64,000 nucleotides of DNA from Ascidiella aspersa (GCA_963924565.1 OZ004613.1:6696001-6760000), one strand, 5' to 3'; shown: positions 28,777 to 53,121, counted from the first letter of the stretch. Numbers and translations are program-made. Notes: a model not told the origin generated them from the sequence alone.

Positions 28777-30574
28777 TCAGTGAGATGGGTGTGCCTGTAT
28801 TTTGGAAGCCAGCTCCTTTGTGTCAATGTCAACTGAGGTTACGGCTAAACGAAGGCAGGCTTCGAGAGATGTTTGTTTAAGTAGATTCCTCTCTTTGGAT
28901 TTAATCGACTTCATTGCAGAAAATGCTGCTTCACAAAGGTAGGCACTGCCAAACATTGACAGCAAGTGCAATCCAAAACGGCGTAAATTAGGATAATGCT
29001 CTTCAGAAAGAAGAGGCCAAAATTTAGTGATTGGCAGTGTAGCTTTGCTTAATAAAAACTGGTCACTTTGCAAGTCACACAATTCAAGCTGCAAATCGTC
29101 ATCGGCTTCTGATATAGTTATAGTCAGCGGAGCATTGAATACATTGAAGTTTTTCTCAAGGTGCCGGAAATCTTGAAATCGCTTGTTGAAGTCTTCAATC
29201 AGGGTATCAAGAGTTTCAACAAAGCAGCAGAAGTTATTGTCCTCTATTTCTTTAGAAATAACGTCACAACTTGGAAAGTGAATCAGAATGTTACTTTGCA
29301 GATTACTTTTGAAGAGACATAATTTTTTGCGGAAGCCATCTATGAAACCATACAGAGAAGCAATTGTTTGATTCCTACCCTGTAAACTTAAATTGAGCTT
29401 ATTCAGATGCTGAGTAATATCCGTGAAAAATGCTAGACCTTTCAGAAAGTTGACGTCTTGCAATAAACCTTTAAACCCATCAGTGTCTGCATTCAGTTCT
29501 TCTAAAAAGTTTAGAATCTCATTACGCAGACTGAAGAACTGCTGCAAACATTTCCCAGCACTAAGCCAACGAACAGTAGAATGGAGTGAAACGTCAGAAA
29601 ATTCTGTATCCAAATCTTTCAAGAAATCAACAAATAGACGATGTCTCAGCGCTTTATTACCGCCTCTAATGAAATTAATAATTTCATTACATGCTGCATC
29701 ACATCAGATAAACGTATACAGCGACTAGATAACGATTCTTGATGAATAATGCAATGAAGCATTGGGCAGTCGACTCCAGCATCTCTCAAGTACCCTATAA
29801 CCCCTCTTTTAGCTCCAGTCATTGATTTGGCCCCATCTGTAACGATGCAAGAGCATTTCTGAAATCCACCATACTTGCTCACTGAAGAATTCAGCGCTTC
29901 ATAAATATCAGATCCTTTCGTAGTGGTAAAAAGTGGGAGTAAGCCGAGTAACTCCTCACTGACATTAAACTGTGAGTCAATACTTTTAATAAAGACAAGC
30001 AACTGGCTGACATCCCTTATATCTGTGCTTTCATAAAGAGCGAGAGAAAAATAAACACACTGCTGAATTTGATTCATGACCTTCTCCTGAACGAAATTGC
30101 TAAGCTCTTCAACACGTCTAGCAACAGTTTGATGCGAGAGTGGAATTTTTTCAAACCCACGAGCTGCATCGTTAAAGCCCATGGCCTTTCCCATAGCTAT
30201 TGCACATCGCTTAATGAGATCACCGTCAGAGAATGCCTTTTTGGATTTAGCCATCAAAAGTGATACATCATAAGAAGCAATGGTTGTAGAAGACGAAGGC
30301 TTCACTAATTGAAACATGTTTTCTTGACGCTTACGCAGGTTTGATTTGAGATCATTGAGTAGGGCTCGCCGCGCCTCACCAGTGTATTTATCATAGCCAG
30401 TGACATGAAGAGTGCTGTAGTGTCGTTGTACATATTGTACTCTTTCATAACAGATATCATTTCATTACAAATTAAACATAAAACTCGACCACTTTGTTCT
30501 TTCACCAGGAATCTCAATTCCCAACTATCCTTGAATTTACGTTTTTCATCACAGATTTTTCTTTTCTGAGCCAT
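28777..30574 (-). pseudogene. hAT transposase pseudogene (GTF2IRD2/EPM2AIP1/ZBED5-like)
   Basis: MAQKRK.. start at 30574; BED-like CLIC..RHY..H, TDGA, HCIIHQE, VRWLS and YLCEAAFS motifs. Frameshifts at ~30432 (+2) and ~29682 (-1); the first catalytic Asp is mutated (LDES>LYES). Confidence 0.92.
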
Positions 30575-30900
30575 CGTAAAAAATGTGGCACTAAGTCTGA
30601 AAAGAAAGAATAAAACAGAATGTAATGGAGGATTAAGTAAAACTGAAATTATAAAGAATATTCTCAGCATAAAGCACACAGCCAATATTGCAGAAAACAT
30701 TTTATTTACAAATGCCTGACGTTTCGAGATAAACTTTTCTCATTTTCAAAGGCTACATTGTACCGGTTAGGGTTAGGCTAAACTTGTGACGTCATATCAG
30801 AAAAATTTGTACCACTGTACTCTAAATAATTTCGTTGAACTGTGTATTTAGTGTTTCAAAGACTTGTTTTTAGTTTTGCGTTTTCCTAAAGCCTTTACAC

Positions 30901-31346
30901 CAGTGGTCGCCAAACTGCGGGCCGCGGCCTAAATATCGGCCGCAGAGCCATTTTCAGTGGACCGCGATCTACTTTTGAATAGTTTAGTGTTATCATGTAG
31001 TTGTGGGCCGCGTGATAGCGTTACTTTCTTTGCACTTTATTTAAAAAAAAAATTTGGCTTAGAATTTTTATATTTTCTCAGCATGGTTCAGACCCACGTG
31101 CCAATTGTGGTACTGAGAGTGCCTGTCAAACTATATATATCTTTTTTGTATATTCTTTGTTTCATAATATGTTTTACTTTGTGGCATGGCTGTGTTTTAG
31201 GCATCGAGGCGCCGTGTAATACTTCGCCTTAAAACTCAAAAATATCCTAAATTCGCCACTTTTTTCGTAGTGGTTTTACGTAGTGGGCCTTCAATAGCTC
31301 TGAAAAGAGTACTTTAGCCGCAACAAAAAAAGTTCACCGAAGACCT
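30901..31346. mobile_element. hAT MITE nested in the 5' region of the large hAT
   Basis: Left TIR cagtggtcgccaaact; perfect TSD cttTAcac (30893-30900, 31347-31354); right TIR degenerate. Confidence 0.75.
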
Positions 31347-31850
31347 CTTTACACAAACGGTTGGACGAATTGTAATAGAAAGATGACAATTCGTAAAAAT
31401 GTTAACATAATATAGGGTTCCCTTTAAGGCGCGGCCCGCCAATGTAAATCACCAGGCCGCAACCTCTTCTATAGCATGAGGCCATTCTTCATATGTTTTG
31501 GCTATTTTAACTACGTAAACGTAAATATTTGCCAAATCCCACTTGTGCATATGCGGCACAGACCTTTTGCGCAGTACAATAGCTGAATCAGCGTTACAAC
31601 ATACCTATACTCACTAAAACAAATATTTGCTCTGTACAACTCAGACGGAACACCGTTAAGCAAGGCGTAAATAAATATCAAAGTCAATACAGAAGTATAG
31701 CTAACATTTGCTAAAAGTTTCGATTACAATTTCATTCAACATTTTCATCAATGCATCCAACTTCAGTATGGGATTTGATATTCTTATTACGTTAGACTAC
31801 AACCTCTAACCATAACATTGGTACAACGTTCTACTTTTGTTTAAAGATAT

Positions 31851-31920
31851 TGTAGGGGTGCCGTAATCTATTTATTATTTCTGAGGGGTGCCGCAAGCCA
31901 TAAAAGGTTGGGAACCACTG
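31851..31920. mobile_element. Right-end fragment of the 14667-type MITE
   Basis: Matches 14902-14971 and ends aggttgggaaccactg; left end absent. Confidence 0.65.
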
Positions 31921-32326
31921 TTGTAAACAAAGACAAGTAGAGCGATTTCTATCTATTGACATGTTACCTTGTGGACCTAACTCTATTCCAAAATGAAGTT
32001 GAGATAGGTGGGCAATGTATCTGATTGATTAATTATTAACAGAGCAACGCCACCTTGTAAAATATTCCGACAACGTCACACTTCCAGTTTTTCAGCATGG
32101 TCTTAAGGGACACCAGCAAATATTGCGCTCCTGACTGCAAAAAACTACCTCGGCAAGCACTTTTCGCTTGGTTAAGGATAGGTACGAAAACAGTTTATGG
32201 AAGATCATTAGCAACTTAAGTCATTTCGTCTGTAAAGCTTTTAAAGCAAAGCGCGTTTAAGTTCAGGTTTAGAATGATCATTTGTTCAACTTTTGCAGTG
32301 ATACGCTTTTGTTTTGCAGTTTTATA

Positions 32327-33100
32327 ATGGCGCAAGTTGGTAGGTTAAACGGTAAAGTGACCGTTGTCACTGGAGCCGCAGGGGGCATCGGGGAAGCTAT
32401 TTGCGAACGCTTTCTGGCCGAAGGTGCCAACGTAATGATGGTGGATTGCCATTTGGAAAATCTCAAAGTTGTTCATGGAAAATTGAATGCCAGTTATGAA
32501 GGTAAAGTGGCGATGATTCGATGCGACGTAACGGAAGAGAATTCGGCTTGTGAGGCGTTCACGGCTGCAAACGAGCAGTTCAAGCAGAATTGTAACGTTT
32601 TGGTTAACTGCGCTGGTATTCCGGGCATGTCTCCAATTGTCGAAGCAAGCCTGGCTTTCTTCAATAAGGTATTAAGCGTCAACCTTAAGGGCGCCTTCAC
32701 TTTCACGAGAGAGTTCTTACGGCGACTTGAGCTTGGAGAGAAGAAGGATACGACAGGTGCCAGTATAGTTAACATCGCCAGCATTGCAGCCAATACAGGA
32801 TTTGAAAATTTATCTGCCTACGGTGCTTCTAAAGCTGGACTGGTCGCTTTCACAAAGACGACGTGCATTGAGGTGGGAAAATACGGTGTCAGGTGCAATG
32901 CGCTAACGCCAGGTGCAATTGACACAGCTTTCATAAGCGATACCCAAAAGGAACAGTTTGAGACGTTAAAGGCGATGATTCCAATGAGGCGCCTTGGAAA
33001 GCCGATTGAAGTTGCTAATGCTTGTTTGTTCCTGGCAAGCGATGAAAGCTCTTACATTAATGGGGCAACACTTCAAGTATCTGGTGGTTCTATGGCGTGA
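32327..33100 (+). CDS. HSD17B8-like: Classical SDR, HSD17B8/FabG-like (SDR-13), 257 aa, NAD-type (Asp40)
   Basis: Intact, YGASK; gttttgcag|ttttataATG. Confidence 0.92.
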   Translation: MAQVGRLNGKVTVVTGAAGGIGEAICERFLAEGANVMMVDCHLENLKVVHGKLNASYEGKVAMIRCDVTEENSACEAFTAANEQFKQNCNVLVNCAGIPGMSPIVEASLAFFNKVLSVNLKGAFTFTREFLRRLELGEKKDTTGASIVNIASIAANTGFENLSAYGASKAGLVAFTKTTCIEVGKYGVRCNALTPGAIDTAFISDTQKEQFETLKAMIPMRRLGKPIEVANACLFLASDESSYINGATLQVSGGSMA

Positions 33101-33513
33101 ATCATTTAACGAATAAAGCTCCACAGACTGGATTGCTATATTTTAGGTTGCGTTATTATTGTTACAAAGCTAATAATTTGACTTGTCGTTAAAATGAATA
33201 AACAGCGTCAGAATAGCGACATATTTCAATGGAATAAATGCCGTGTTGTAAACAAGTTATTTTGAAATGGCTTAAGTCAAAGTCGGGATATTTGTAAAAT
33301 AACTAAAGTCCAAGTCAAGTCTGTTTGAATAAATACCAAGTCAAGTCCCAGTTAAGTCATAATTAGAGCAAATCCATCTCAAGTCAAGTCCTTTTCATAA
33401 AAATTAAACGTTAAACAATTACATTTGGTAAACTTTACCATTCATGGACAATAATTCAACAGAAACATAACAAAAACGCAAAATATATGACAATCCTTTT
33501 ACGTGCACATATT

Positions 33514-34703
33514 CAATTTAGTTATTTTTGCGTTATGCTTTTGAGACAACTGCATTTCTGTTCCAAATTTAAAATGGCGCAGGTTGATGATTACTAATAT
33601 TTTCATAAAAAAACTAAATTAAATTTGTTTTTTGACTAAGTAACTTTTCGGAGAGTTTGAACTGTGAAGTAGCCCACAGTTGAAACCCAGTAGACTCTAC
33701 ATGTAGTATAAGCCTTACAGGCTCTATGAGTCTACAGAAATCGACATGAAGTATAAATGTAAGATTCTCAAAATCTATATGTATAATACATTTTTTCAAA
33801 TAATAAATATTAGTCGAAAAATAATGCTTTGGTGCCTTCTTTTCAAAGATGTTTCGGATTCGTTGGTTGACCAATAGGCAACATTTGGTAAACATTTCGA
33901 ATAAAAATTCATTTTCAACATCTTTCTTCATTTTCAACATTTTGATCCATTTTCAACATTTTTATCAATGCAACCTACTTCAGCATGGGCTTAGATATTC
34001 TTACTACGTTAGACTACAACCTTTAGTTTTTAAGCATGTCCATTACACACACCAGTAAATATTGCGCTCTTGGGTACGAAAACGACCCCGACAAGCACTT
34101 TTCGCTTGGTTAAAGATCTGGAACGAAAAAGTTTAAGCAAGCCATTACCAACGTAAGTCAAGTCTGTAGAGCTTTGAAAGCACAGCGCATTTAACTTCAG
34201 GTTTAGAATGATCATTTTTCCAACTTTTGCAGTCTTATAGATTGTAAAATATCATTAGATATTATAAAAATAATAAGCAAAAAACGGTCGCAAAATGCCC
34301 TGTCCGCAGCAAAATGTTTTTTATCTTAAATTCCTATATGGTGTTACTCGTAAACAAGGCTAGTAGACGGCTCGGGATTCGGGAATTAATTACAGCTACC
34401 TAAGTCCACAGTCTAGAGTGGCTTACACAGTGGCAAGTATGTTCTACCAACCTATCGTGGTTGCATATGATAACCCTATACGTGTACATTCGTGTCTACC
34501 CGCTCTATTTTAATACCATTGTTAGAAAGAATATTGCGCTATGGAGAGTCAGGCTCGAGATTCGAATTTTTTTTAGCCGTATAGTTAAAGTTCTTCTGAA
34601 ATTGTGCTTTTACATATAAATAACGAACCGGGTGAAAAAATGACAGAAAAGGGGAAAAAGGCTCAAAATATGAAACTGAACCTATTTAAGGCGAGCCCAA
34701 AAG
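33514..34703 (+). repeat. 1.19-kb spacer unit, 1 copy
   Basis: Unit start caatttagttatttttg at 33514 recurs at 34704. Confidence 0.9.
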
Positions 34704-34857
34704 CAATTTAGTTATTTTTGAAATATGCTTTTGTTACAACTGCATTTCTGTTCCAAATTTAAAATGGCACAGGTTGATAATTACTAATATTTTCATAAAA
34801 AAAACTAAATTAAATTTGTTTTGGGACTAAGTAGTGACAGCCCAGCAGACTCTTCAT

Positions 34858-35010
34858 CAGGGTTAAGGAAAGTTGGCCACCAATACCTACGGCTTGCACA
34901 CTTTTTCTGTCCTGTCAGCCGATGTGGATATTTTGATTGATAGCTCATTTACCCCCTAAAACGAGAAAATTTACCCCTGGGGTAAATTTACCCCAGGTTA
35001 AGAAAGGCTG
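34858..35010. mobile_element. 153-bp hAT-type MITE (co-duplicated copies at 40690-40843 and 45347-45500)
   Basis: TSD ctcTAcat (one mismatch per copy); palindrome ggggtaaatttacccc; empty site in the 1.19-kb units; left TIR degenerate. Confidence 0.7.
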
Positions 35011-35786
35011 CTCTACATGCAGACTCTACGAGTTTACAAAATCTACATGAAGTATAAATGTAAGATTCTCAAAATCTATATGTATAAGACATTTTTTCAA
35101 ATAATCAATATTAATCTAAAAATAACGCGTTGGTGCCTTCTTTTTAAAGATGTTCTGATTCGCTGAATGTTACATATTTGCGCAACAAGTTCGACCGAAA
35201 TCGCAAAGTTTCTTAAATCTTATTAGTTTGTTGCGCAAAATGGTTACGTCATCTTTGAATATTTTAATTTCGCAGATATTTTAGGGTATTGCGACACATT
35301 AAAGGTTTTGTCAAGCATCGATGTACGTAATCATGGCAAAAGTAGGGTAATACAAGCGCTCGTTAAAATTTGCGACATATGTAATTGCAAGGCAGTGTAG
35401 CGGCGTTTGTTCCCCATAAATTCGTGGCTAAACTTTCACTCTTTGCGGTTGTTTTTTCTATTTATGTCACGTTCTCGTTCAACGCTCATATCATGCGCGA
35501 TCTCGTTCAATAACTAATTACACGATGACGCAGAGTGCAACTGACTGGTCACACGTTCAGATTTACAACGAAGGGCAGCCACAAACAGTTATGCAACTCA
35601 GAAAAAAAAGACTCTAAAATAACAGCACAATTGAAGTGACAAAACTTTGTTAGGATCAGTTGTCAGCGATAAGAATACATGTAAGGAAGTCAGCGCAAGG
35701 AGATTGATACAAAAAAATAAATAATACGGTTGTCGCCATAATTGCATATTATTTTTTAGGCTGCATCTGTGTTCAGTATTTTTAGT

Positions 35787-36560
35787 ATGGCACCATTAGG
35801 TAGATTACAAGGTAAAGTGGCGATTGTCACTGGAGCCGCAGGGGGCATCGGGGAAGCTATTTGCGAACGTTTTTTGGCCGAAGATGCCAAAGTCATGATG
35901 CTGGGTCGGAATGAAGAAAATCTCAAAAATGTTTACGAAAAGTTAGTTGCGAAGTACAAAGAAAATGTGGCCATGATTCAATGTGACGTAGCTGAAGAGA
36001 ATTCGGCTTGTGAGGCTTTTACTGCTGTAAGCAAGCAATTCGGAGGGAATTGTAACGTTTTGGTTAACTGCGCTGGTATTCCCGGCATGTCTCCAATCGT
36101 CGAAACAAGCCTGGATTCATTCAATAAGGTATTAAGCGTCAACCTTAAAGGCGCCTTCACTTTCACGAGAGAGTTCTTACGGCGACTTGAGCTTGCTGAG
36201 AACAAGGATTCAACAGGAGCAAGCATAGTTAACATCTCCAGCATTGCAGCCAATACAGGATTTGAAAATTTATCTGCCTACGGTGCTTCTAAAGCTGGAC
36301 TGGTCGCTTTCACAAAGACGACGTGCATTGAGGTGGGAAAATACGGTGTCAGGTGCAATGCGCTAACGCCAGGTGTAATTGACACAGCTTTCATAAGCGA
36401 TACCCAAAAGGAACAGTTTGAGACGTTAAAGGCGATGATTCCAATGAGGCGCATTGGAAAGCCGATTGAAGTTGCTAATGCTTGTTTGTTCCTGGCAAGC
36501 GATGAAAGCTCCTACATTAATGGGGCAACACTTCAAGTATCTGGTGGTTCTATGGCGTGA
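35787..36560 (+). CDS. HSD17B8-like: Classical SDR (SDR-14), 257 aa, hybrid of an SDR-16-like N-terminus and an SDR-13-like C-terminus, NADP-type
   Basis: Intact ORF from MAPLGR; see findings for the mosaic structure. Confidence 0.9.
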   Translation: MAPLGRLQGKVAIVTGAAGGIGEAICERFLAEDAKVMMLGRNEENLKNVYEKLVAKYKENVAMIQCDVAEENSACEAFTAVSKQFGGNCNVLVNCAGIPGMSPIVETSLDSFNKVLSVNLKGAFTFTREFLRRLELAENKDSTGASIVNISSIAANTGFENLSAYGASKAGLVAFTKTTCIEVGKYGVRCNALTPGVIDTAFISDTQKEQFETLKAMIPMRRIGKPIEVANACLFLASDESSYINGATLQVSGGSMA

Positions 36561-36962
36561 ATCATTTAACGAATAAAGCTCCACAGACTGGATTTCTATA
36601 TTTTAGGTTGCCATATTGTTGTTACTAAGCTAATAATTTGACTTGTCGTTAAAATGAATAAATAGCTTCAGAATAGCGACATATTTTAATGGAATAAATG
36701 CCGTGTTGTAAACAAGTCATTTTGAAATGGCTTAAGTCAAAGTCGGGATATTTGTAAAATAACTTAAGTCCAAGTCAAGTCTGTTTGAATAAATACCAAG
36801 TCAAGTCCCAGTTAAGTCATAATTAGAGCAAATCTATTTCAAGTCAAGTCCTTGTCATAAAAATTAAAATTTAATTCTCTACCATTCATGGACAATAATT
36901 CAACTGAAACATAAGAAAAACGCAAAATATATGACAAGCTAATATTTTTACGTACACATATT

Positions 36963-39900
36963 CAATTTAGTTATTTTTGCGTTATGCTTTTGAGACAACT
37001 GCATTTCTGTTCCAAATTTAAAATGGCGCAGGTTGATGATTACTAATATTTTCATAAAAAAACTAAATTAAATTTGTTTTTTGACTAAGTAACTTTTCGG
37101 AGAGTTTGAACTGTGAAGTAGCCCACAGTTGCAACCCAGCAGACTCTACATGTAGTATAAGCCTTACAGGCTCTATGAGTCTACAGAAATCGACATGAAG
37201 TATAAATGTAAGATTCTCAAAATCTATATGTATAATACATTTTTTCAAATAATAAATATTAGTCGAAAAATAATGCTTTGGTGCCTTCTTTTCAAAGATG
37301 TTTCGGATTCGTTGGTTGACCAATAGGCAACATTTGGTAAACATTTCAAATAAAAATTCATTTTCAACATCTTTATTCATTTTCAACATTTTCATCCATT
37401 TTCAACATTTTTATCAATGCAACCTACTTCAGTATGGGCTTTGATATTCTTACTACGTTAGACTACAAACTTTAGTTTTTAAGCATAGCCATTAGAGACA
37501 CCAGTAAATATTGCGCTCTTGGGTACGAAAACGACCCCGACAAGCACTTTCGCTTGGTTAAAGATCTGGAACGAAAAAGTTTAAGCAAGCCATTACCAAC
37601 TTAAGTCAAGTCTGTAGAGATTTGAAAGCACAGCGCATTTAACTTCAGGTTTAGAATGATCATTTTTCCAACTTTTGCAGTCTTATAGATTGTAAAATAT
37701 CATTAGATATTATAAAAATAATAAGCAAAAAACGGTCGCAAAATGCCCTGTCCGCAGCAAAATGTTTTTTATCTTAAATTGCTATATGGTGTTACTCGTA
37801 AACAAGGCTAGTAGACGGCTCGGGATTCGGGAATTAATTACAACTACCTAAGTCCACAGTCTAGAGTGGCTTACACAGTGGCAAGTATGTTCTACCAACC
37901 TATCCTGGTTGCATATGATAACCCTATACGTGTACATTCGTGTCTACCCACTCTATTTTAATACCATTGTTAGAAAGAATATTGCGCTATGGAGAGTCAG
38001 GCTCGAGATTCGAATTTTTTTTAGCCGTATAGTTAAAGCTCTTCTGAAATTGTGCTTTTACATATAAATAACAAACCGGGTGAAAAAATGACAGAAAAGG
38101 GGAAAAAGGCTCAAAATATGAAACTAAAACTTTTTAAGGCGAGCCCAAAACCAATTTAGTTATTTTTGCATTATGCTTTTGAGACAACTGCATTTCTGTT
38201 CCAAATTTAAAATGGCACAGGTTGATAATTACTAATATTTTCATAAAAAAAACTAAATTAAATTTGTTTTTTGACTAAGTAACTTTTCGGAGAGTTTGAA
38301 CTGTGAAGTAGCCCACAGTTGCAACCCAGCAGACTCTGCATGTATAGTATAAGCCTTACAGGCTCTATGAGTCTACAGAAATCGACATGAAGTATAAATG
38401 TAAGATTCTCAAAATCTATATGTATAAAACATTTTTTCAAGTAATAAATATTAGTCGAAAAATAATGCTTTGGTGCCTTCTTTTCAAAGATGTTTCGGAT
38501 TCGTTGGTTGACCAATAGGCAACATTTGGTAAACATTTCAAATAAAAATTCATTTTCAACATCTTTATTCATTTTCAACATTTTCATCCATTTTCAACAT
38601 TTTTATCAATGCAACCTACTTCAGTATGGGCTTTGATATTCTTACTACGTTAGACTACAAACTTTAGTTTTTAAGCATAGCCATTAGAGACACCAGTAAA
38701 TATTGCGCTCTTGGGTACGAAAACGACCCCGACAAGCACTTTTCGCTTGGTTAAAGATCTGGAACGAAAAGGTTTAAGCAAGCCATTACCAACGTTAGTC
38801 AAGTCTGTAGAGATTTGAAAGCACAGCGCATTTAACTTCAGGTTTAGAATGATCATTTTTCCAACTTTTGCAGTCTTATAGATTGTAAAATATCATTAGA
38901 TATTATAAAAATAATAAGCAAAAAACGGTCGCAAAATGCCCTGTCCGCAGCAAAATGTTTTTTATCTTAAATTGCTATATGGTGTTACTTGCAAACAAGG
39001 CTAGTAGACGGCTCGGGATTCGGGAATTAATTACAGCTACCTGAGTCCAGAGTCTAGAGTGGCTTACACAGTGGCAAGTATGTTCTACCAACCTATCGTG
39101 GTTGCATATGATAACCCTATACGTGTACATTCGTGTCTACCCACTCTATTTTAATACCATTGTTAGAAAGAATATTGTGCTATGGAGAGTCAGGCTCGAG
39201 ATTCGAATTTTTTTTTAGCCGTATAGTTAAAGCTCTTCTGAAATTGTGCTTTTACATATAAATAACAAACCGGGGAAAAAATGACAGAAAAGGGGAAAAC
39301 GGCTCAAAATATGAAACTAAACCTTTTTAAGGCGAGCCCAAAAGCAATTTAGTTATTTTTGCATTATGCTTTTGAGACAACTGCATTTCTGTTCCAAATT
39401 ATAATGGCACAGGTTGATAATTACTAATATTTTCATAAAAAAAACTAAATTAAATTTGTTTTTTGACTAAGTAACTTTTCGGAGAGTTTGAACTGTGAAG
39501 TAGCCCACAGTTGCAACCCAGTAGACTCTACATGTAGTATAAGCCTTACAGGCTCTATGAGTCTACAGAAATCGACATGAAGTATAAATGTAAGATTCTC
39601 AAAATCTATATGTATAATACATTTTTTCAAATAATAAATATTAGTCGAAAAATAATGCTTTGGTGCCTTCTTTTCAAAGATGTTTCTGATTCGTTGGTTG
39701 ACCAATAGGCAACATTTGGTAAACATTTCGAATAAAAATTCATTTTCAACATCTTTCTTCATTTTCAACATTTTGATCCATTTTCAACATTTTTATCAAT
39801 GCAACCTACTTCAGTATGGGCTTTGATATTCTTTCTACGTTAGACTACAGCCTTTAGTTTTTAAGCATAGCCATTAGAGACACCAGTAAATATTGCGCTC

Positions 39901-40535
39901 TTGGGTACGAAAACGACCCCGACAAGCACTTTTCGCTTGGTTAAAGATCTGGAACGAAAAAGTTTAAGCAAGCCATTACCAACTTAAGTCAAGTCTGTAG
40001 AGATTTGAAAGCACAGCGCATTTAACTTCAGGTTTAGAATGATCATTTTTCCAACTTTTGCAGTCTTATAGATTGTAAACTATCATTAGATATTATAAAA
40101 ATAATAAGCAAAAAACGGTCGCAAAATGCCCTGTCCGCAGCAAAATGTTTTTTATCTTAAATTGCTATATGGTGTTACTCGTAAACAAGGCTAGTAGACG
40201 GCTCGGGATTCGGGAATTAATTACAGCTACCTAAGTCCACAGTCTAGAGTGGCTTACACAGTGGCAAGTATGTTCTACCAACCTATCGTGGTTTCATATG
40301 ATAACCCTATACGTGTACATTCGTGTCTACCCGCTCTATTTTAATACCATTGTTAGAAAGAATATTGCGCTATGGAGAGTCAGGCTCGAGATTCGAATTT
40401 TTTTTTAGCCGCATAGTTAAAGCTCTTCTGAAATTGTGCTTTTACATATAAATAACGAACCGGGTGAAAAAATGACAGAAAAGGGGAAAAAGGCTCAAAA
40501 TATGAAACTGAACCTTTTTAAGGCGAGCCCAAAAG
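36963..40535 (+). repeat. 1.19-kb spacer unit, 3 tandem copies
   Basis: Unit starts at 36963, 38152 and 39345; next boundary at 40536. Confidence 0.92.
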
Positions 40536-41633
40536 CAATTTAGTTATTTTTGCATTATGCTTTTGTGACAACTGCATTTCTGTTCCAAATTTAAAATGGC
40601 ACAGGTTGATAATTACTAATATTTTCATAAAAAAAACTAAATTAAATTTGTTTTGGGACTAAGTAGTGACAGCCCAGCAGACTCTACATCAGGGTTAAGG
40701 AAAGTTGGCCACCAATGCCTACGGCTTGCACACTTTTTCTGTCCTGTCAGCCGATGTGGATATTTTGATTGATAGCTCATTTACCCCCTAAAACGAGAAA
40801 ATTTATCCCCTGGGGTAAATTTACCCCAGGTTAAGAAAGGCTGCTCTACCTGTAGTATAATCCTTACAGGCTCTACGAGTTTACAAAATCTACATGAAGT
40901 ATAAATGTAAGATTCTCAAAATCTATATGTATAAGACATTTTTTCAAATAATCAATATTAATCTAAAAATAACGCGTTGGTGCCTTCTTTTTAAAGATGT
41001 TCTGATTCGCTGAATGTTACATATTTGCGCAACAAGTTCGACCGAAATCGCAAAGTTTCTTAAATCTTATTAGTTTGTTGCGCAAAATGGTTACGTCATC
41101 TTTGAATATTTTAATTTCGCAGATGTTTTAGGGTATTGCAACACATTAAAGGTTTTGTCAAGCATCGATGTACGTAATCATGGCAAAAGTAGGGTAATAC
41201 AAGCGCTCGTTAAAATTTGCGACATATGTAATTGCAAGGCAGTGTAGCGGCGTTTGTACCCCATAAATTCGTGGCTAAACTTTCACTCTTTGCCGTTGTT
41301 TTTCTATTTATGTCACGTTCTCGTTCAACGCTCATATCATGCGCGATCTCGTTCAATAACTAATTACACGATGACGCAGAGTGCAACTGACTGGTCACAC
41401 GTTCAGATTTACAACGAAGGGCAGCCACAAACAGTTATGCAACTCAGAAAAAAAAAGACTCTAAAATAACAGCACAATTGAAGTGACAAAACTTTGTTAG
41501 GATCAGTTGTCAGCGATAAGAATACATGTAAGGAAGTCAGCGCAAGGAGATTGATACAAAAAAATAAATAATACGGTTGTCGCCATAATTGCATATTATT
41601 TTTTAGGCTGCATCTGTGTTCAGTATTTTTAGT

Positions 41634-42407
41634 ATGGCACCATTAGGTAGATTACAAGGTAAAGTGGCCATTGTCACTGGAGCCGCAGGGGGCATCGGGG
41701 AAGCTATTTGCGAACGTTTTTTGGCCGAAGATGCCAAAGTCATGATGCTGGGTCGGAATGAAGAAAATCTCAAAAATGTTTACGAAAAGTTAGTTGCGAA
41801 GTACAAAGAAAACGTGGCCATGATTCAATGTGACGTAGCTGAAGAGAATTCGGCTTGTGAGGCTTTTACTGCTGTAAGCAAGCAATTCGGAGGGAATTGT
41901 AACGTTTTGGTTAACTGCGCTGGTATTCCCGGCATGTCTCCAATCGTCGAAACAAGCCTGGATTCATTCAATAAGGTATTAAGCGTCAACCTTAAAGGCG
42001 CCTTCACTTTCACGAGAGAGTTCTTACGGCGACTTGAGCTTGCTGAGAACAAGGATTCAACAGGAGCAAGTATAGTTAACATCTCCAGCATTGCAGCCAA
42101 TACAGGATTTGAAAATTTATCTGCCTACGGTGCTTCTAAAGCTGGACTGGTCGCTTTCACAAAGACGACGTGCATTGAGGTGGGAAAATACGGTGTCAGG
42201 TGCAATGCGCTAACGCCAGGTGTAATTGACACAGCTTTCATAAGCGATACCCAAAAGGAACAGTTTGAGACGTTAAAGGCGATGATTCCAATGAGGCGCA
42301 TTGGAAAGCCGATTGAAGTTGCTAATGCTTGTTTGTTCCTGGCAAGCGATGAAAGCTCCTACATTAATGGGGCAACACTTCAAGTATCTGGTGGTTCTAT
42401 GGCGTGA
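41634..42407 (+). CDS. HSD17B8-like: Classical SDR (SDR-15), protein identical to SDR-14
   Basis: Identical translation with a few synonymous differences (gcg/gcc, aat/aac, agc/agt). Confidence 0.88.
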   Translation: MAPLGRLQGKVAIVTGAAGGIGEAICERFLAEDAKVMMLGRNEENLKNVYEKLVAKYKENVAMIQCDVAEENSACEAFTAVSKQFGGNCNVLVNCAGIPGMSPIVETSLDSFNKVLSVNLKGAFTFTREFLRRLELAENKDSTGASIVNISSIAANTGFENLSAYGASKAGLVAFTKTTCIEVGKYGVRCNALTPGVIDTAFISDTQKEQFETLKAMIPMRRIGKPIEVANACLFLASDESSYINGATLQVSGGSMA

Positions 42408-42809
42408 ATCATTTAACGAATAAAGCTCCACAGACTGGATTGCTATATTTTAGGTTGCGTTATTGTTGTTACAAAGCTAATAATTTGACTTGTCGTTAAA
42501 ATGAATAAATAGCTTCAGAATAGCGACATATTTTAATGGAATAAATGCCGTGTTGTAAACAAGTCATTTTGAAATGGCATAAGTCAAAGTCGGGATATTT
42601 GTAAAATAACTTAAGTCCAAGTCAAGTCTGTTTGAATAAATACCAAGTCAAGTCCCAGTTAAGTCATAATTAGAGCAAATCTATTTCAAGTCAAGTCCTT
42701 GTCATAAAAATTAAAATTTAATTCTCTACCATTCATGGACAATAATTCAACTGAAACATAAGAAAAACGCAAAATATATGACAAGCTAATATTTTTACGT
42801 ACATATATT

Positions 42810-45191
42810 CAATTTAGTTATTTTTGCGTTATGCTTTTAAGACAACTGCATTTCTGTTCCAAATTTAAAATGGCGCAGGTTGATGATTACTAATATTTTC
42901 ATAAAAAAACTAAATTAAATTTGTTTTTTGACTAAGTAACTTTTCGGAGAGTTTGAACTGTGAAGTAGCCCACAGTTGCAACCCAGCACACTCTACATGT
43001 AGTATAAGCCTTACAGGCTCTATGAGTCTACAGAAATCGACATGAAGTATAAATGTAAGATTCTCAAAATCTATATGTATAATACATTTTTTCAAATAAT
43101 AAACATTAGTCGAAAAATAATGCTTTGGTGCCTTCTTTTCAAAGATGTTTCGGATTCGTTGGTTGAACAATTGGCAACATTTGGTAAACATTTCAAATAA
43201 AAATTCATTTTCAACATCTTTATTCATTTTCAACATTTTCATCCATTTTCAACATTTTTATCAATGCAACCTACTTCAGTATGGGCTTTGATATTCTTAC
43301 TACGTTAGACTACAGCCTTTAGTTTTTAAGCATAGCCATTAGAGATACCAGTAAATATTGCGCTCTTGGGTACGAAAACGACCCCGACAAGCACTTTCGC
43401 TTGGTTAAAGATCTGGAACGAAAAAGTTTAAGCAAGCCATTACCAAAGTAAGTCAAGTCTGTAGAGATTTGAAAGCACAGCGCATTTAACTTCAGGTTTA
43501 GAATGATCATTTTTCCAACTTTTGCAGTCTTATAGAATCTAGAATATCATTAGATATTATAGAAATAATAAGCAAAAAACGGTCGCAAAATGCCCTGTCC
43601 GCAGCAAAATGTTTTTTATCTTAAATTGCTATATGGTGTTACTTGCAAACAAGGCTAGTAGACGGCTCGGGATTCGGGAATTAATTACAGCTACCTAAGT
43701 CCACAGTCTAGAGTGGCTTACACAGTGGCAAGTATGTTCTACCAACCTATCGTGGTTGCATATGATAACCCTATACGTGTACATTCGTGTCTACCCACTC
43801 TATTTTAATACCATTGTTAGAAAGAATATTGCGCTATGGAGAGTCAGGCTCGAGATTCGAATTTTTTTTAGCCGTATAGTTAAAGCTCTTCTGAAATTGT
43901 GCTTTTACATATAAATAACAAACCGGGTGAAAAAATGACAGAAAAGGGGAAAAAGGCTCAAAATATGAAACTAAACCTTTTTAAGGCGAGCCCAAAACCA
44001 ATTTAGTTATTTTTGCATTATGCTTTTGAGACAACTGCATTTCTGTTCCAAATTTAAAATGGCACAGGTTGATAATTACTAATATTTTCATAAAAAAAAC
44101 TAAATTAAATTTGTTTTTTGACTAAGTAACTTTTCGGAGAGTTTGAACTGTGAAGTAGCCCACAGTTGCAACCCAGTAGACTCTACATGTAGTATAAGCC
44201 TTACAGGCTCTACGAGTCTACAGAAATCGACATGAAGTATAAATGTAAGATTCTCAAAATCTATATGTATAATACATTTTTTTAAATAATAAATATTAGT
44301 CGAAAAATAATGCTTTGGTGCCTTCTTTTCAAAGATGTTTCTGATTCGTTGGTTGACCAATAGGCAACATTTGGTAAACATTTCGAATAAAAATTCATTT
44401 TCAACATCTTTCTTCATTTTCAACATTTTGATCCATTTTCAACATTTTTATCAATGCAACCTACTTCAGTATGGGCTTTGATATTCTTACTACGTTAGAC
44501 TACAACCTTTAGTTTTTAAGCATAGTTATTAGAGACACCAGTAAATATTGCGCTCTTGGGTACGAAAACGACCCCGACAAGCACTTTTCGCTTGGTTAAA
44601 GATCTGGAACGAAAAAGTTTAAGCAAGCCATTACCAACGTTAGTCAAGTCTGTAGAGCTTTGAAAGCACAGCGCATTTAACTTCAGGTTTAGAATGATCA
44701 TTTTTCCAACTTTTGCAGTCTTATAGATTGTAAAATATCATTAGATATTATAAAAATAATAAGCAAAAAACGGTCGCAAAATGCCCTGTCCGCAGCAAAA
44801 TGTTTTTTATCTTAAATTGCTATATGGTATTACTTGCAAACAAGGCTAGTAGACGGCTCGGGATTCGGGAATTAATTACAGCTACCTAAGTCCACAGTCT
44901 AGAGTGGCTTACACAGTGGCAAGTATGTTCTACCAACCTATCGTGGTTGCATATGATAACCCTATACGTGTACATTCGTGTCTACCCACTCTATTTTAAT
45001 ACCATTGTTAGAAAGAATATTGCGCTATGGAGAGTCAGGCTCGAGATTCGAATTTTTTTTTGAGCCGTATAGTTAAAGCTCTTCTCAAATTGTGCTTTTA
45101 CATATAAATAACGAACAGGGTGAAAAAATGACAGAAAAGGGGAAAAAGGCTCAAAATATGAAACTGAACCTATTTAAGGCGAGCCCAAAAG
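42810..45191 (+). repeat. 1.19-kb spacer unit, 2 tandem copies
   Basis: Unit starts at 42810 and 43999; next boundary at 45192. Confidence 0.92.
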
Positions 45192-46275
45192 CAATTTACT
45201 TATTTTTGAAATATGCTTTTGTGACAACTGCATTTCTGTTCCAAATTTAAAATGGCACAGGTTGATAATTACTAATATTTTCATAAAAAAAAACTAAATT
45301 AAATTTGTTTTGGGACTAAGTAGTGACAGCCCAGCAGACTCTTCATCAGGGGTAAGGAAAGTTGGCCACCAATACCTACGGCTTGCACACTTTTTCTGTC
45401 CTGTCAGCCGATGTGGATATTTTGATTGATAGCTCATTTACCGCCTAAAACGAGAAAATTTATCCCCTGTGGTAAATTTTCCCCAGGTTAAGAAAGGCTG
45501 CTCTACATGCAGACTCTACGAGTTTACAAAATTTACATGAAGTATAAATGTAAGATTCACAAAATCTATATGTATAAGACATTTTTTCAGATAATCAATA
45601 TTAATCTAAAAATAACGCGTTGGTGCCTTCTTTTTAAAGATGTTCTGATTCGCTGAATGTTACATATTTGCGCAACAAGTTGGACCGAAATCAAAGTTTC
45701 TTAAATCTTATTAGTTTGTTGCGCAAAATGGTTACGTCATCTTTGAATATTTTAATTTCGCAGATGTTTTAGGGTATTGCGACACATTAAAGGTTTTGTC
45801 AAGCATCGATGTACGTAATCATGGCAAAAGTAGGGTAATACAAGCGCTCGTTAAATTTTGCGACATATGTAATTGCAAGGCAGTGTAGCGGCGTTTGTAC
45901 CCCATAAATTCGTGGCTAAACTTTCACTCTTTGCCGTTGTTTTTTCTATTTATGTCACGTTCTCGTTCAACGCTCATATCATGCGCGATCTCGTTCAATA
46001 ACTAGTTACACGATGACGCAGAGTGCAACTGACTGGTCACACGTTCAGATTTACAACGAAGGGCAGCCACAAACAGTTATGCAACTGAGAAAAAAAAAGA
46101 CTCTAAAATAACAGCACAATTGAAGTGACAAAACTTTGTTAGGATCAGTTGTCAGCGATAAGAATACATGTAAGGAAGTCAGCGCAAGGAGATTGATACA
46201 AAAAAATAAGTAATACGGTTGTCGCCATAATTGCATATTATTTTTTAGGCTGCATCTGTGTTCAGTATTTTTAGT

Positions 46276-47052
46276 ATGGCACCATTAGGTAGATTACAAG
46301 GTAAAGTGGCCATTGTCACTGGAGCCGCAGGGGGCATCGGGGAAGCTATTTGCGAACGTTTTTTGGCCGAAGATGCCAAAGTCATGATGCTGGGTCGGAA
46401 TGAAGAAAATCTCAAAAATGTTTACGAAAAGTTAGTTGCGAAGTACAAAGAAAATGTGGCCATGATTCGATGCGATGTAGCTGAAGAGAATTCGGCTTGT
46501 GAGGTCTTTACTGCTGTTAAAAAGCAATTCGGACAGAATTGCAATGTTCTGGTTAATAATGCTGCTGTCTTGTCAGTGTCGTCGATCGTTGACACAACCA
46601 TGGATTCATTCAACCAAGCATTGGACGTCAACCTGAACGGCGTCTTTATCTATACAAAGGAATTTCTCAAGCGGCTCAAACTTACCGAGGGTCAAAATGC
46701 AGCAGGCGCAAACATCGTTAACGTCACCAGCATGGCGGGTAGGCTGGGATTCAAAGATTGCTCTGCCTACTCTGCTTCTAAAGGTGGAGTGGATGCTTTC
46801 ACAAAGACGACATGCATTGAGGTGGCAAGGTTCGGTGTCAGGTGCAATGGGGTTTCGCCCTGTGTTATTGATACTCCATTGCTACACCGCTCGTTTAACA
46901 AAGCCTATATCGATGCTGTCAAGCCAATGATTCCGATGGGGCGCTTTGGAAAGCCGGTAGAAGTTGCTAATGCTTGTTTGTTCCTGGCAAGCGATGAAAG
47001 CTCTTACATCGATGGAGCGATCTTAGAAATATCTGGTGGTTTTATGGCCTAA
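46276..47052 (+). CDS. HSD17B8-like: Classical SDR, HSD17B8/FabG-like (SDR-16), 258 aa, NADP-type
   Basis: Intact, YSASK; the first 64 residues are identical to SDR-14/15 and the C-terminal two thirds are distinct. Confidence 0.92.
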   Translation: MAPLGRLQGKVAIVTGAAGGIGEAICERFLAEDAKVMMLGRNEENLKNVYEKLVAKYKENVAMIRCDVAEENSACEVFTAVKKQFGQNCNVLVNNAAVLSVSSIVDTTMDSFNQALDVNLNGVFIYTKEFLKRLKLTEGQNAAGANIVNVTSMAGRLGFKDCSAYSASKGGVDAFTKTTCIEVARFGVRCNGVSPCVIDTPLLHRSFNKAYIDAVKPMIPMGRFGKPVEVANACLFLASDESSYIDGAILEISGGFMA

Positions 47053-51831: not shown

Positions 51832-52101
51832 TATAAAACCACCAAACAAAACCGCAATAACTGCAACAGTTGAAAGCTTGATGTGCTTCTAAGCCTGTTA
51901 TCTTATGCACTTTCCCAGCCAAGCCAACAATACCTATATGATGCATTGAGTGTCGTGTTTGAAAACATGAAGTTAATGATTGGCAGAACCTGAAAAACAG
52001 CAGCCAAAGCGAGCAGTGTTTGCTAAGATCCGTAGCTGTAGTGAGTGAATGCGTTTATAAGGCATAAACCTATGTATTTTTGTGTTATTGTTATTCTAAC
52101 T

Positions 52102-52722: not shown

Positions 52723-53121
52723 CTTTAAGGTTTTACACAGTAGGCCTATGCCTTGCGAAGGATGTGGATAAACATAACTAGGTTCAATCTGACATAGACA
52801 ACGCGATATGCACTACCGGGACCTTTGCAAACTTTCAGAGATGATATCACAATTAGGGTCAAACATGTATTTGTAGGAAATCGCTGATTCCAAAGAGCAC
52901 TTGCAAAAACAAAGCGTGAAAAAATCGTTATATGTTTAAAAATAGTACAAAGATATTCTAAATTGGAGGTCATAGGGCACATAAATAAGATTCGACCCAT
53001 TGCTCGAAATGATGGCATTATTCCTATAATTTTGGAAAATACACCAAAGAGCCACTGCTCCATAGCCGTATGAACATTAAACTTGCACAAAAGTCTTGTA
53101 CAGAAAAGTGAGCGAGGTATT

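What the first reader, a model, noticed from the sequence alone, without database searches (positions are those of the whole stretch)
32327..47052. Lepore-type hybrid genes graft an NADP-type cofactor module onto an NAD-type enzyme's substrate pocket
Seen: the order is SDR-13, spacer, SDR-14, spacer, SDR-15, spacer, SDR-16. SDR-14/15 have the promoter and first 64 residues of SDR-16 (Gly40-Arg41). From NCNVLVNCAGIPGMS onward they follow SDR-13 (Asp40), with the same three substrate loops, only two differences after IAANTG, and the same 3' flank. This is the product expected from unequal crossover between SDR-16 and SDR-13 around codons 65-90, followed by one more duplication. Inference: one recombination event created an enzyme with SDR-13's substrate, the opposite cofactor (possibly the reverse reaction direction) and SDR-16's regulation, which was then amplified. 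This is the strongest sign that the array is a modular cofactor x substrate shuffling system.
Basis: partly seen in the sequence, partly recalled or inferred. Interest (0 to 1): 0.86.

Follow-up and report, generated by a model that had tools for sequence, protein, structure and literature searches.

The report
Hybrid dehydrogenase genes from unequal crossover
Two near-identical, transcribed genes in a tandem array of short-chain dehydrogenases are real hybrids of their two neighbours. They were made by an ordinary unequal crossover of the "anti-Lepore" kind and then duplicated once more, and they are predicted, not shown, to join an NADP-type cofactor half to the catalytic and substrate half of an NAD-type enzyme.

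Summary
S14 (35787-36560) and S15 (41634-42407) match S16 (46276-47052) through the whole upstream spacer and CDS nt 1-186. From nt 267 on, and in the 3' flank, they match S13 (32327-33100).

- **Incongruence:** each half gives a 100%-supported clade. AU tests reject the opposite groupings (p 0.002 and 2.5e-6). The best breakpoint is nt 258/267 (Fisher 3e-32).
- **Spacers:** all three are homologous end to end, as expected if S16 on one chromatid recombined with S13 on the other.
- **Type:** this is the anti-Lepore (duplication) product, not Lepore. A second crossover inside a 1.19-kb spacer sub-repeat then duplicated the hybrid.
- **Reads:** independent Illumina DNA reads, k-mer depth and stranded RNA reads support about two hybrid copies and transcription.
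- **Junction:** it is not clean. A 75-nt patchy zone has 6 sites matching neither parent. A small S16-like patch sits at nt 329-333. Divergence from S13 is 8% in nt 267-458 but 1% in nt 459-771.
- **Cofactor swap:** Gly40-Arg41 versus Asp40 at the end of strand beta2 is a sound sequence-based prediction but is untested.
- **"Shuffling system":** this is over-read. The array shows ordinary conversion and crossover mosaicism.

It is a new example of a textbook mechanism.

The parts
32327..33100 (+). S13, the upstream parent: intact 257-aa classical SDR with Asp40 at the end of strand beta2 (predicted NAD type). It donated CDS nt ~267-774 and the 3' flank to the hybrids.
   Evidence: ORF. Pfam PF13561/PF00106. 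S13+S14+S15 clade at 100/100 for nt 267-771. The N-terminal 73 aa match NAD+-dependent 15-PGDH best among classical SDRs, with Asp aligned. Stranded RNA reads.
33101..35786 (+). Spacer 1: 3' flank F3 33101-33513, one 1190-bp sub-repeat R 33514-34703, 130-bp partial R 34704-34833, upstream block F5 34834-35786.
   Evidence: Self-BLAST. Segment distances. R occurs only in these three spacers in the whole genome.
35787..36560 (+). S14, hybrid copy 1: nt 1-186 match S16, nt 194-266 are a patchy zone, nt 267-774 match S13. Intact 257-aa ORF with Gly40-Arg41.
   Evidence: AlphaFold model with pLDDT 94.5. DNA and RNA reads.
35973..36052 (+). Junction zone in S14 (CDS nt 187-266, codons 63-89; helix alphaD and the loop before strand beta4). 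Parental states alternate and 6 sites match neither parent. The main switch lies between nt 258 and nt 267.
   Evidence: Site table. Max-chi2. No other donor in the genome; best non-self matches are 87% (S16), 86%, 84% and 81% (S13). Secondary structure.
36561..41633 (+). Spacer 2: F3 36561-36962, three R units (36963-38151, 38152-39344, 39345-40535), partial R 40536-40665, F5 40666-41633. It is itself a recombinant: its F3 is like spacer 3 and its F5 is like spacer 1.
   Evidence: F3 differs 1.5% from spacer 3 and 5.8% from spacer 1; F5 differs 0.84% from spacer 1 and 1.8% from spacer 3. Site pattern.
41634..42407 (+). S15, hybrid copy 2: protein identical to S14, with 3 synonymous differences at CDS nt 36, 180 and 438.
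   Evidence: In the X8 reads, C:T is 10:8 at window 36224 (nt 438), so both copy types are present.
42408..46275 (+). Spacer 3: F3 42408-42809, two R units (42810-43998, 43999-45192), partial R 45193-45322, F5 45323-46275.
46276..47052 (+). S16, the downstream parent: intact 258-aa SDR with Gly40-Arg41 (predicted NADP type). It donated the upstream region and CDS nt 1 to ~260. Its 3' half and downstream flank are unrelated to those of S13, S14 and S15.
   Evidence: the downstream flank is about 44% identical to F3, which is noise level. S14+S15+S16 clade at 100/99 for nt 1-190. Its L005/L006-like affinity runs continuously across the hybrid's breakpoint to about nt 300.
35904..35909 (+). Codons 40-41 of S14 (Gly-Arg), immediately at and after the end of strand beta2. 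This is the predicted 2'-phosphate (NADP) determinant. The equivalent codon 40 of S13 (32444-32446) is Asp.
   Evidence: Alignment. Model strand beta2 spans residues 35-40. The GR-type N-terminus aligns with 'GRN' of NADPH-dependent malonyl-CoA reductase and with DHRS4 and L. brevis R-ADH.

Best explanation
S13 and S16 are old neighbouring paralogues (about 73% DNA identity) in a tandem array of intronless classical SDR genes in an animal-like genome.

First event. A misaligned homologous exchange paired S16 on one chromatid with S13 on the other. It resolved in the most conserved local stretch: codons 65-89, helix alphaD and the loop before strand beta4, which include a 22-nt run identical in both parents. 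The duplication-bearing product is 13 - spacer - hybrid(16 5'::13 3') - spacer - 16. This is the anti-Lepore configuration.

Second event. A later unequal crossover inside the 1.19-kb sub-repeat array of the two spacers duplicated the hybrid with its flanks. This gave S14 and S15 and the 1/3/2 sub-repeat counts.

Later changes. Small conversion patches and point changes blurred the junction, and S13 diverged in nt 267-458.

State of the hybrids. They are intact, carry only synonymous differences from each other, and are transcribed.

Predicted function. The first beta-alpha-beta-alpha-beta-alpha unit comes from S16, including Gly40-Arg41 at the end of beta2. The NNAG strand, the catalytic Asn-Ser-Tyr-Lys residues and the substrate loops come from S13. 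The hybrids are therefore predicted to act on S13's substrate with NADP(H) instead of NAD(H), under S16-type upstream sequence.

Shown: the mosaic, the flanks, the incongruence, a copy number of about 2, and transcription. Inferred: the crossover mechanism and the order of events. Predicted only: cofactor use, substrate and reaction direction.
For: - Mosaic and flanks.
- Segment trees: 100/99 and 100/100.
- AU tests: p 0.0019 and 2.5e-6; max-chi2 3e-32.
- All three spacers are homologous end to end. Sequence upstream of S13 and downstream of S16 is unrelated to them.
- Spacer 2 is a recombinant of spacer 3 (5' part) and spacer 1 (3' part).
- S16's affinity to L005/L006 runs continuously across the hybrid's breakpoint, so S16 is a parent and not the recombinant.
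- Reads:
  - DNA depth in the hybrid-specific bin 35976-36174 is 8.0, against about 4.0 in the S13-specific bins.
  - An X1 contig over 36047-36335 has k-mer depth 119, against 41-50 for single-copy contigs.
  - The S14/S15 diagnostic site splits 10:8.
  - Stranded RNA reads lie over S13 and over the hybrid, including the junction bin.
- Purifying selection: 3 of 3 S14/S15 differences are synonymous, and the CDS differs 0.4% against 1.5-1.8% for the spacers.
- Fold and motifs: Pfam; T15, G16, G20, G22, N119, S152, Y165, K169; model pLDDT 94.5 with beta2 35-40, alphaD 71-85 and beta4 91-94.
- Cofactor motif: the GR N-terminus best matches NADPH enzymes and the Asp N-terminus best matches NAD+ 15-PGDH.
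- Laboratory module swapping has reversed the coenzyme preference of an SDR (review PMC5655348).
- Anti-Lepore definition, and a reduplication precedent in hedgehog globins: PMC4041002.
Against: - The junction is not a single clean breakpoint. Six sites in nt 194-297 match neither parent, and no other donor exists in this assembly.
- An S16-specific state (nt 329, Asp110) lies inside the S13-like part.
- Divergence from S13 is very uneven: about 8% in nt 267-458, 1% in nt 459-771 and 5-6% in the first 400 bp of the 3' flank. At least one further conversion or a burst of change in S13 is therefore needed.
- Read coverage was only about 6x, so the 2:1 depth ratio is noisy, and no long read spanning S14 to S15 was examined.
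- No listed contig piece was shown to bridge the junction.
- Cofactor preference, substrate and direction are untested. Arg after beta2 predicts NADP preference but does not guarantee it.
Confidence: 0.78

Rival explanations
1. Interparalogue gene conversion without crossover. A pre-existing plain duplicate (of S13 or of S16) was overwritten on one side by its neighbour, giving the same chimeric pattern without the hybrid arising together with the copy-number gain.
For: - Conversion is demonstrably active in this array. The gene at 21826-22731 (- strand) carries a 135-nt 3' graft that is 96% identical to S13.
- There are S16-like micro-patches inside the hybrid's S13-like part.
- Divergence is uneven along the hybrid.
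- PMC4041002 notes that conversion can mimic Lepore and anti-Lepore patterns.
Against: - The switch in affinity includes the complete flanking spacers (2.7-5 kb), not only the coding part. That would need kilobase-long tracts ending exactly at a homologous in-frame point.
- One crossover explains the extra copy, both flanks and the order 13-H-16 at once.
Confidence: 0.1
2. The hybrid type is the ancestral gene. S13 and S16 are the recombinants: their outer halves were replaced by other paralogues.
For: With three sequences the recombinant cannot be named from similarity alone. S16 itself looks like an older mosaic, L005/L006-like up to about nt 300.
Against: - No donor exists for S13's 5' half or S16's 3' half; both sit on long, isolated branches.
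- S16's L005/L006 affinity runs uninterrupted across the hybrid's breakpoint at nt 260.
- Two independent long replacements would be needed instead of one exchange.
Confidence: 0.05
3. Assembly artefact: the second hybrid copy, or the hybrid itself, is a mis-join or a retained haplotype of a repeat-rich region.
For: The region is highly repetitive, with units 97-99% alike. Short-read depth was low and noisy.
Against: - The window has no N runs.
- The two units differ by 1.5-1.8% in their spacers and in sub-repeat number, 3 against 2.
- Independent Illumina reads give about 2x depth in the hybrid-specific bin and a roughly 1:1 split at a site that distinguishes S14 from S15.
- X1 k-mer depth is 2.4-2.9x single copy.
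Confidence: 0.04
4. One reading: the array is a selected, modular cofactor x substrate shuffling system in which N-terminal cofactor modules are repeatedly re-assorted with C-terminal substrate modules.
For: - Three mosaics have junctions in the same region: hybrid nt 258/267, L007 about nt 220, S16 about nt 300.
- Two well-supported sister pairs in the 3' tree differ in cofactor motif: S13 versus the hybrids, and L009 versus L007.
- The junction coincides with a structural boundary, the alphaD/beta4 loop.
Against: - The older breakpoints are post-hoc and weakly supported.
- The region is also where the paralogues are most alike, so homology-driven exchange alone predicts junctions there.
- Cofactor type needs only 4 changes on the 5' tree and 6 on the 3' tree for 25 genes.
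- No special sequence feature or machinery is associated with the array.
- The one graft in another gene lies at the 3' end, not at the module boundary.
Confidence: 0.1

Closest known systems
Anti-Lepore haemoglobin duplications (HBB/HBD fusion genes; fixed examples in carnivores, eulipotyphlans and cetaceans; PMC4041002)
   Same: - A tandem pair of paralogues undergoes unequal crossover.
- The hybrid has the 5' part and upstream flank of the downstream gene, and the 3' part and downstream flank of the upstream gene.
- The junction is in frame and both parents are retained on either side.
- The later reduplication of the hybrid has a precedent in hedgehogs.
   Different: - The genes here are intronless enzyme genes in an invertebrate-like genome.
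- The parents are far more diverged (73%).
- The junction is patchy.
- The two halves carry separable biochemical functions (cofactor versus substrate) rather than mainly regulatory differences.
CYP11B1/CYP11B2 chimeric gene of glucocorticoid-remediable aldosteronism (PMC8750845, abstract seen)
   Same: Unequal crossing-over occurs between adjacent enzyme paralogues. The chimera joins the 5' and regulatory part of one gene to the catalytic specificity of the other. The retention of both parents in that case is stated from my own knowledge, not.
   Different: That case is a human disease allele in intron-containing P450 genes, and what is swapped is regulation. Here the exchange also moves a cofactor-binding sub-domain.
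Engineered coenzyme switching in SDRs by point mutation or module swapping (review PMC5655348; L. brevis R-ADH wild-type and mutant structures appear among the PDB hits)
   Same: The determinant is the same: Asp versus Gly/Arg at and after the end of strand beta2 of the Rossmann fold. The idea is also the same: replacing the coenzyme pocket with that of a homologue changes the preference.
   Different: Those cases are laboratory constructs with measured kinetics. Here the swap is natural, covers the whole first 64-88 residues, and has not been assayed.
Hybrid genes in other tandem families formed by NAHR and conversion (KIR, glycophorin GYPA/GYPB; titles and abstracts seen; red/green opsins from my own knowledge)
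   Same: Copy-number change and chimeric genes arise from misaligned paralogues, with recurrent exchange within one cluster.
   Different: Those are receptor or surface-protein families in vertebrates, with no cofactor or substrate partition.

Membership tests
Classical short-chain dehydrogenase/reductase (Pfam PF00106 / PF13561) | Match above the Pfam gathering score | tested here: met
   S13, S14 and S16 score 194-209 bits on PF13561 (cut-off 27) and 164-177 bits on PF00106 (cut-off 26.6).
Classical short-chain dehydrogenase/reductase (Pfam PF00106 / PF13561) | Gly-rich TGxxxGxG cofactor motif and the catalytic Asn-Ser-Tyr-Lys residues | tested here: met
   T15, G16, G20, G22, N119, S152, Y165 and K169 are present in S14. 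They are invariant or nearly invariant in a 38-sequence alignment. The NNAG motif reads NCAG in S13/S14/S15 and NNAA in S16.
Classical short-chain dehydrogenase/reductase (Pfam PF00106 / PF13561) | Single-domain Rossmann fold of about 250 residues | tested here: met
   AlphaFold2 model: pLDDT 94.5, pTM 0.93, alternating strand/helix order E11-14 ... E248-251. Best PDB sequence matches are FabG-like and R-ADH SDRs at E 1e-45 to 1e-38.
Anti-Lepore-type duplication hybrid (unequal crossover product) | 5' part and upstream flank derive from the downstream parent | tested here: met
   S14/S15 are 98-100% identical to S16 over the upstream spacer and nt 1-186. Clade support is 100/99. AU rejects S13+hybrid there, p 0.0019.
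Anti-Lepore-type duplication hybrid (unequal crossover product) | 3' part and downstream flank derive from the upstream parent | tested here: met
   The S13+S14+S15 clade has 100/100 support for nt 267-771. AU rejects S16+hybrid, p 2.5e-6. The 3' flank F3 is 94-95% identical to S13's flank and unrelated to S16's.
Anti-Lepore-type duplication hybrid (unequal crossover product) | Both parents retained, in the order upstream parent - hybrid - downstream parent, with the intergenic spacer duplicated | tested here: met
   The order is S13, S14, S15, S16, all with intact ORFs. The three spacers are homologous end to end.
Anti-Lepore-type duplication hybrid (unequal crossover product) | The extra copies are real in the organism's DNA | tested here: inconclusive
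   Short reads at about 6x give 8.0 against about 4.0 depth and a 10:8 split at the S14/S15 site. X1 contig k-mer depth is 119 against 41-50. This is supportive but noisy, and no spanning long reads were available.
   The orientation is the reverse (16 5'::13 3') and both parents are present. No 13 5'::16 3' gene was found in the genome-wide search.
NADP(H)-preferring classical SDR (basic residue directly after strand beta2) versus NAD(H)-preferring (Asp at the end of beta2); rule stated from my own knowledge of coenzyme-based SDR classification | The sequence determinant at the end of beta2 | tested here: met
   S14/S15/S16 read ...VMMLG40-R41-N and S13 reads ...VMMVD40-C-H. Model strand beta2 spans 35-40. 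The GR form aligns with 'GRN' of NADPH-dependent enzymes, and the Asp form aligns with Asp of NAD+ 15-PGDH.
NADP(H)-preferring classical SDR (basic residue directly after strand beta2) versus NAD(H)-preferring (Asp at the end of beta2); rule stated from my own knowledge of coenzyme-based SDR classification | Measured coenzyme preference | not testable with these tools
   This needs purified enzymes and kinetics with NAD(H) and NADP(H).

The most novel reading that the evidence does not exclude
The exchange seen in S14/S15 may be the latest of several in this array that all resolve at the alphaD/beta4 boundary (nt ~210-300). If so, NAD-type and NADP-type first halves would be repeatedly re-assorted with different substrate halves, and the viable products kept by selection. 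That would be a natural counterpart of laboratory module swapping and a route to cofactor switching by recombination instead of point mutation.
Probability: 0.12. Interest if true: 0.65.

Novelty: new member of a known kind. Interest (0 to 1): 0.38.

Why it matters
The case is clean, recent and well bounded: an ordinary unequal crossover has produced intact, transcribed enzyme genes. The two halves of each gene carry separable biochemical determinants, with adenosine/2'-phosphate recognition in one and the catalytic centre plus substrate loops in the other. Both parents sit next to the hybrids for direct comparison.

Three enzymes (S13, the hybrid, S16) could be expressed and assayed. That would show whether one recombination event can switch coenzyme preference while keeping the substrate. 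Protein engineers do this deliberately, but it is rarely documented in nature.

It does not reveal a new mechanism. Hybrid genes of this type are textbook genetics.

Tried and rejected
- **Third donor for the junction zone.** A genome-wide DNA search with nt 184-274 of the hybrid found only the two hybrids at 100%, then S16 at 87%, L005 at 86%, L006 at 84% and S13 at 81%. No extra donor exists in this assembly.
- **Donor for S13's odd states in nt 297-451.** The rare states are scattered over different paralogues. L017 shares only 3 of them. They are mostly S13-specific changes, not one conversion tract.
- **The 1.19-kb spacer sub-repeat as a transposon or gene.** Its 108-110-aa minus-strand ORF has no significant Pfam match (best E 0.03). 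The unit occurs nowhere else in the genome except for a roughly 60-80-bp dispersed element.
- **Bacterial-type promoter and terminator scan.** It was uninformative and is not applicable to this eukaryote-like genome.
- **Pairwise max-min identity as a mosaic detector.** It failed because all paralogues share a very conserved 5' end and a hypervariable nt 570-660. I replaced it with nearest-neighbour scans and triplet tests.
- **Earlier findings of the scan.** There was nothing near this place and nothing relevant by words.
- **Database relatives.** The nearest proteins are 51% and 42% identical, unnamed and from metagenome or run assemblies, and the rest are about 40% identical bacterial SDRs. 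No orthologue with a known substrate was found.
- **Takase et al. 2014 (PMC4246080).** This paper on SDR loop swapping is not held. I cite it only through the review PMC5655348.


Full report
**Setting.** The window is G000:C7:6696001-6760000 of a 308.6-Mb, 75-contig assembly. GC is about 38% and genes are separated by kilobases. A hAT-transposase remnant lies at 28777-30317, so the genome looks like that of an animal. The window carries many intronless ORFs of about 257 aa. They are classical short-chain dehydrogenases/reductases (PF13561 and PF00106, far above the gathering scores). Genome-wide there are at least 25 intact copies plus fragments, most of them in C7:6.60-6.75 Mb. The nearest database proteins are only 51% and 42% identical and unnamed. 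Beyond those come bacterial SDRs at about 40%. No substrate can be assigned by orthology.

**Checking the observation.** The four genes are S13 32327-33100, S14 35787-36560, S15 41634-42407 and S16 46276-47052, all on the + strand.

- A four-way DNA alignment with flanks shows that S14 and S15 are 98-100% identical to S16 over at least 600 bp upstream and CDS nt 1-186. From about nt 267 through the stop codon and into the 3' flank they follow S13.
- S13 and S16 themselves are only 73% identical.
- Of 201 sites where the hybrid agrees with exactly one parent, 50:4 (S16:S13) lie 5' of nt 258 and 10:137 lie 3' of nt 267 (Fisher 3e-32).
- Maximum-likelihood trees of 25 intact paralogues place S14+S15+S16 together for nt 1-190 (100/99) and S13+S14+S15 together for nt 267-771 (100/100).
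- AU tests reject the opposite groupings (p 0.0019 and 2.5e-6).

**What the flanks say.** The three spacers are homologous from end to end. Each consists of four blocks:

- a 400-bp 3' flank (F3);
- a 1190-bp unit R, present 1, 3 and 2 times;
- a 130-bp partial R;
- a 950-bp upstream block (F5).

R occurs nowhere else in the genome. Sequence upstream of S13 and downstream of S16 is unrelated to the spacers. This is the structure expected if the ancestral arrangement 13 - spacer - 16 recombined with itself out of register, with S16 paired to S13. The result is 13 - spacer - (16 5'::13 3') - spacer - 16.

Because the hybrid has the 5' end of the downstream gene and both parents are retained, it is the anti-Lepore (duplication) product as defined for HBB/HBD (PMC4041002). 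It is not the Lepore (deletion) product.

S16's own affinity to paralogues L005 and L006 runs uninterrupted across the hybrid's breakpoint to about nt 300. This identifies S16 as a parent and S14/S15 as the recombinants.

**The second duplication.** Spacer 2 is itself a mosaic. Its F3 is closest to spacer 3 (1.5% against 5.8%), and its F5 is closest to spacer 1 (0.84% against 1.8%). The switch lies in the R units. An unequal crossover between the R arrays of the two spacers that then flanked the single hybrid explains three things: the second hybrid copy, the recombinant spacer and the 1/3/2 R counts. S14 and S15 differ at three CDS positions (nt 36, 180, 438), all synonymous. Their spacers differ by 1.5-1.8%, so both copies appear to be under purifying selection.

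**Complications.** The junction is not clean.

- Between nt 194 and nt 266, parental states alternate. Six sites (nt 194, 198, 245, 259, 260, 297) match neither parent.
- No other donor exists in this assembly.
- The parents share a 22-nt identical run (nt 208-229) inside this zone. I infer heteroduplex formation with patchy repair, plus later point changes.
- In a second individual (X2 contigs) the positions nt 194 and 198 carry the parental letters at multi-copy depth. This is a hint, not proof, that those states are young.
- An S16-specific state (nt 329, Asp110; 20 of 21 other paralogues differ) sits inside the S13-like part.
- Divergence from S13 is about 8% in nt 267-458 but about 1% in nt 459-771. 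Most of the excess lies on the S13 branch and is not traceable to one donor.

At least one further small conversion, or a burst of change in S13, is therefore needed.

**Is it real, and is it expressed?** I used one read-laying run on 31001-36960.

- Illumina WGS run X8 was sampled at about 6x. Depth is 8.0 in the bin that only hybrid-type reads can cover at 95% or more (35976-36174), against 1.8-6.4 (mean about 4.0) in five S13-specific bins. Depth is about 11 in the three-copy F5 block.
- At window 36224 (nt 438, which distinguishes S14 from S15) the reads split 10 C to 8 T.
- A contig of run X1 over 36047-36335 has k-mer depth 119, against 41-50 for S13-specific contigs.
- Stranded RNA run X9 puts reads in the sense orientation on S13 and on the hybrid, including the junction bin.

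This supports about two hybrid copies and their transcription. The depth is low, and I saw no long read spanning S14 to S15.

**Function.** An AlphaFold2 model of the hybrid (pLDDT 94.5) gives beta2 at residues 35-40, alphaD at 71-85 and beta4 at 91-94. The main switch (codons 86-89) therefore falls in the alphaD/beta4 loop.

- The S16-derived part is the first beta-alpha-beta-alpha-beta-alpha unit. It holds the Gly-rich motif and the residue pair at the end of beta2.
- The S13-derived part holds the NNAG strand, N119/S152/Y165/K169 and the variable substrate loops.

From established knowledge of classical SDRs, Asp at the end of beta2 favours NAD(H), and a basic residue just after it favours NADP(H). 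Consistent with this:

- The GR-type N-terminus finds NADPH-dependent enzymes first: the malonyl-CoA reductase SDR domain with an aligned 'GRN', DHRS4, clavulanic acid dehydrogenase and L. brevis R-ADH.
- The Asp-type N-terminus finds NAD+-dependent 15-hydroxyprostaglandin dehydrogenase, with the Asp aligned.
- Laboratory module swapping has reversed the coenzyme preference of an SDR (PMC5655348).

The predicted cofactor switch is reasonable but unmeasured. The suggested reversal of reaction direction is a further inference from cellular NAD and NADP ratios.

**The wider claim.** Other mosaics exist.

- L007 pairs with L023 in the 5' part and with L009 in the 3' part (breakpoint about nt 220).
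- S16 is L005/L006-like to about nt 300.
- The minus-strand gene at 21826-22731 carries an out-of-register 135-nt 3' graft 96% identical to S13, which duplicates 21 codons.

This is the ordinary behaviour of a tandem family undergoing conversion and unequal crossover. The cofactor motif changes only 4 times on the 5' tree and 6 times on the 3' tree. Junctions fall where the paralogues are most alike. I find no evidence for a dedicated shuffling system. A selected re-assortment at the module boundary is not excluded, and I rate it at about 0.12.

**Verdict.** The mechanism is supported with two corrections: it is anti-Lepore, and it involves more than one event. The functional reading is plausible but untested, and the system-level claim is not supported. 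This is a new and tidy example of a well-known kind of event.

Noticed in passing
window 21826-22731 (- strand): This SDR gene is an ordinary paralogue of S13 (74%) up to the position equivalent to S13 nt 692. It then jumps back to S13 nt 629 and continues at 96% identity for 135 nt. This is an out-of-register graft from an S13/hybrid-like gene that duplicates 21 codons (…GKQVEVA-KFETLKAMIPMRRLGKPIEVA…). The genes are on opposite strands, so this must be gene conversion, not crossover.
   Followed up: partly
window 25023-25778 (+ strand): This is a sibling of the gene at 21826-22731. Its ORF lacks about 45 residues between NCAGVAPLSP and GASIVNVSS (helix alphaE and the catalytic Asn region). 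It is probably an internally deleted, inactive copy.
   Followed up: no
window 33514-34703; 36963-40535; 42810-45192: A 1190-bp tandem sub-repeat is confined to the three spacers (6 copies, 97-98% alike) and found nowhere else in the genome. Each copy has a 108-110-aa minus-strand ORF with no Pfam match. The copy number of 1/3/2 marks the site of the second unequal crossover.
   Followed up: partly
all SDR paralogues of the array (CDS nt 1-100 versus nt 570-660): The first ~100 nt of the CDS are 90-97% identical at the DNA level even between paralogues that are about 65-70% identical overall. The substrate-loop region at nt ~570-660 is only about 50% identical. This suggests homogenisation or strong constraint at the 5' end and diversification of the substrate loop.
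   Followed up: no
L007 (G000:C7:6687340-6688110), L009 (C7:6669546-6670313), window 21826-22731: An older chimera of the same kind. L007 (Gly-Arg type) groups with L023 in the 5' part and with L009 (Asp type) from about nt 220 onward (uncorrected max-chi2 p 5e-6). S16 itself is L005/L006-like only up to about nt 300.
   Followed up: partly
window 28777-30700 (- strand): A hAT-family transposase remnant (C-terminal dimerisation domain PF05699, split into ORFs 28777-29622 and 29646-30317) lies next to a weak zinc-finger ORF at 30305-30700. A dispersed repeat at 30900-31340 has dozens of copies at 74-85% identity on all chromosomes.
   Followed up: no
window 53083-53632: A tandem repeat of a 39-bp (13-codon) unit is open in two frames (YVIESMQWSCCN… and ITLLNQCNGHVA…). 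It lies about 1.2 kb from the SDR gene at 51058-51849.
   Followed up: no
window 35980, 35984 and bin 35976-36174 in run X2: Contigs of a second individual carry the parental G and C at hybrid nt 194 and 198, at about 3.5x that run's single-copy depth. Summed depth over the junction bin is only about 1x. This may indicate sequence or copy-number polymorphism of the hybrids.
   Followed up: no
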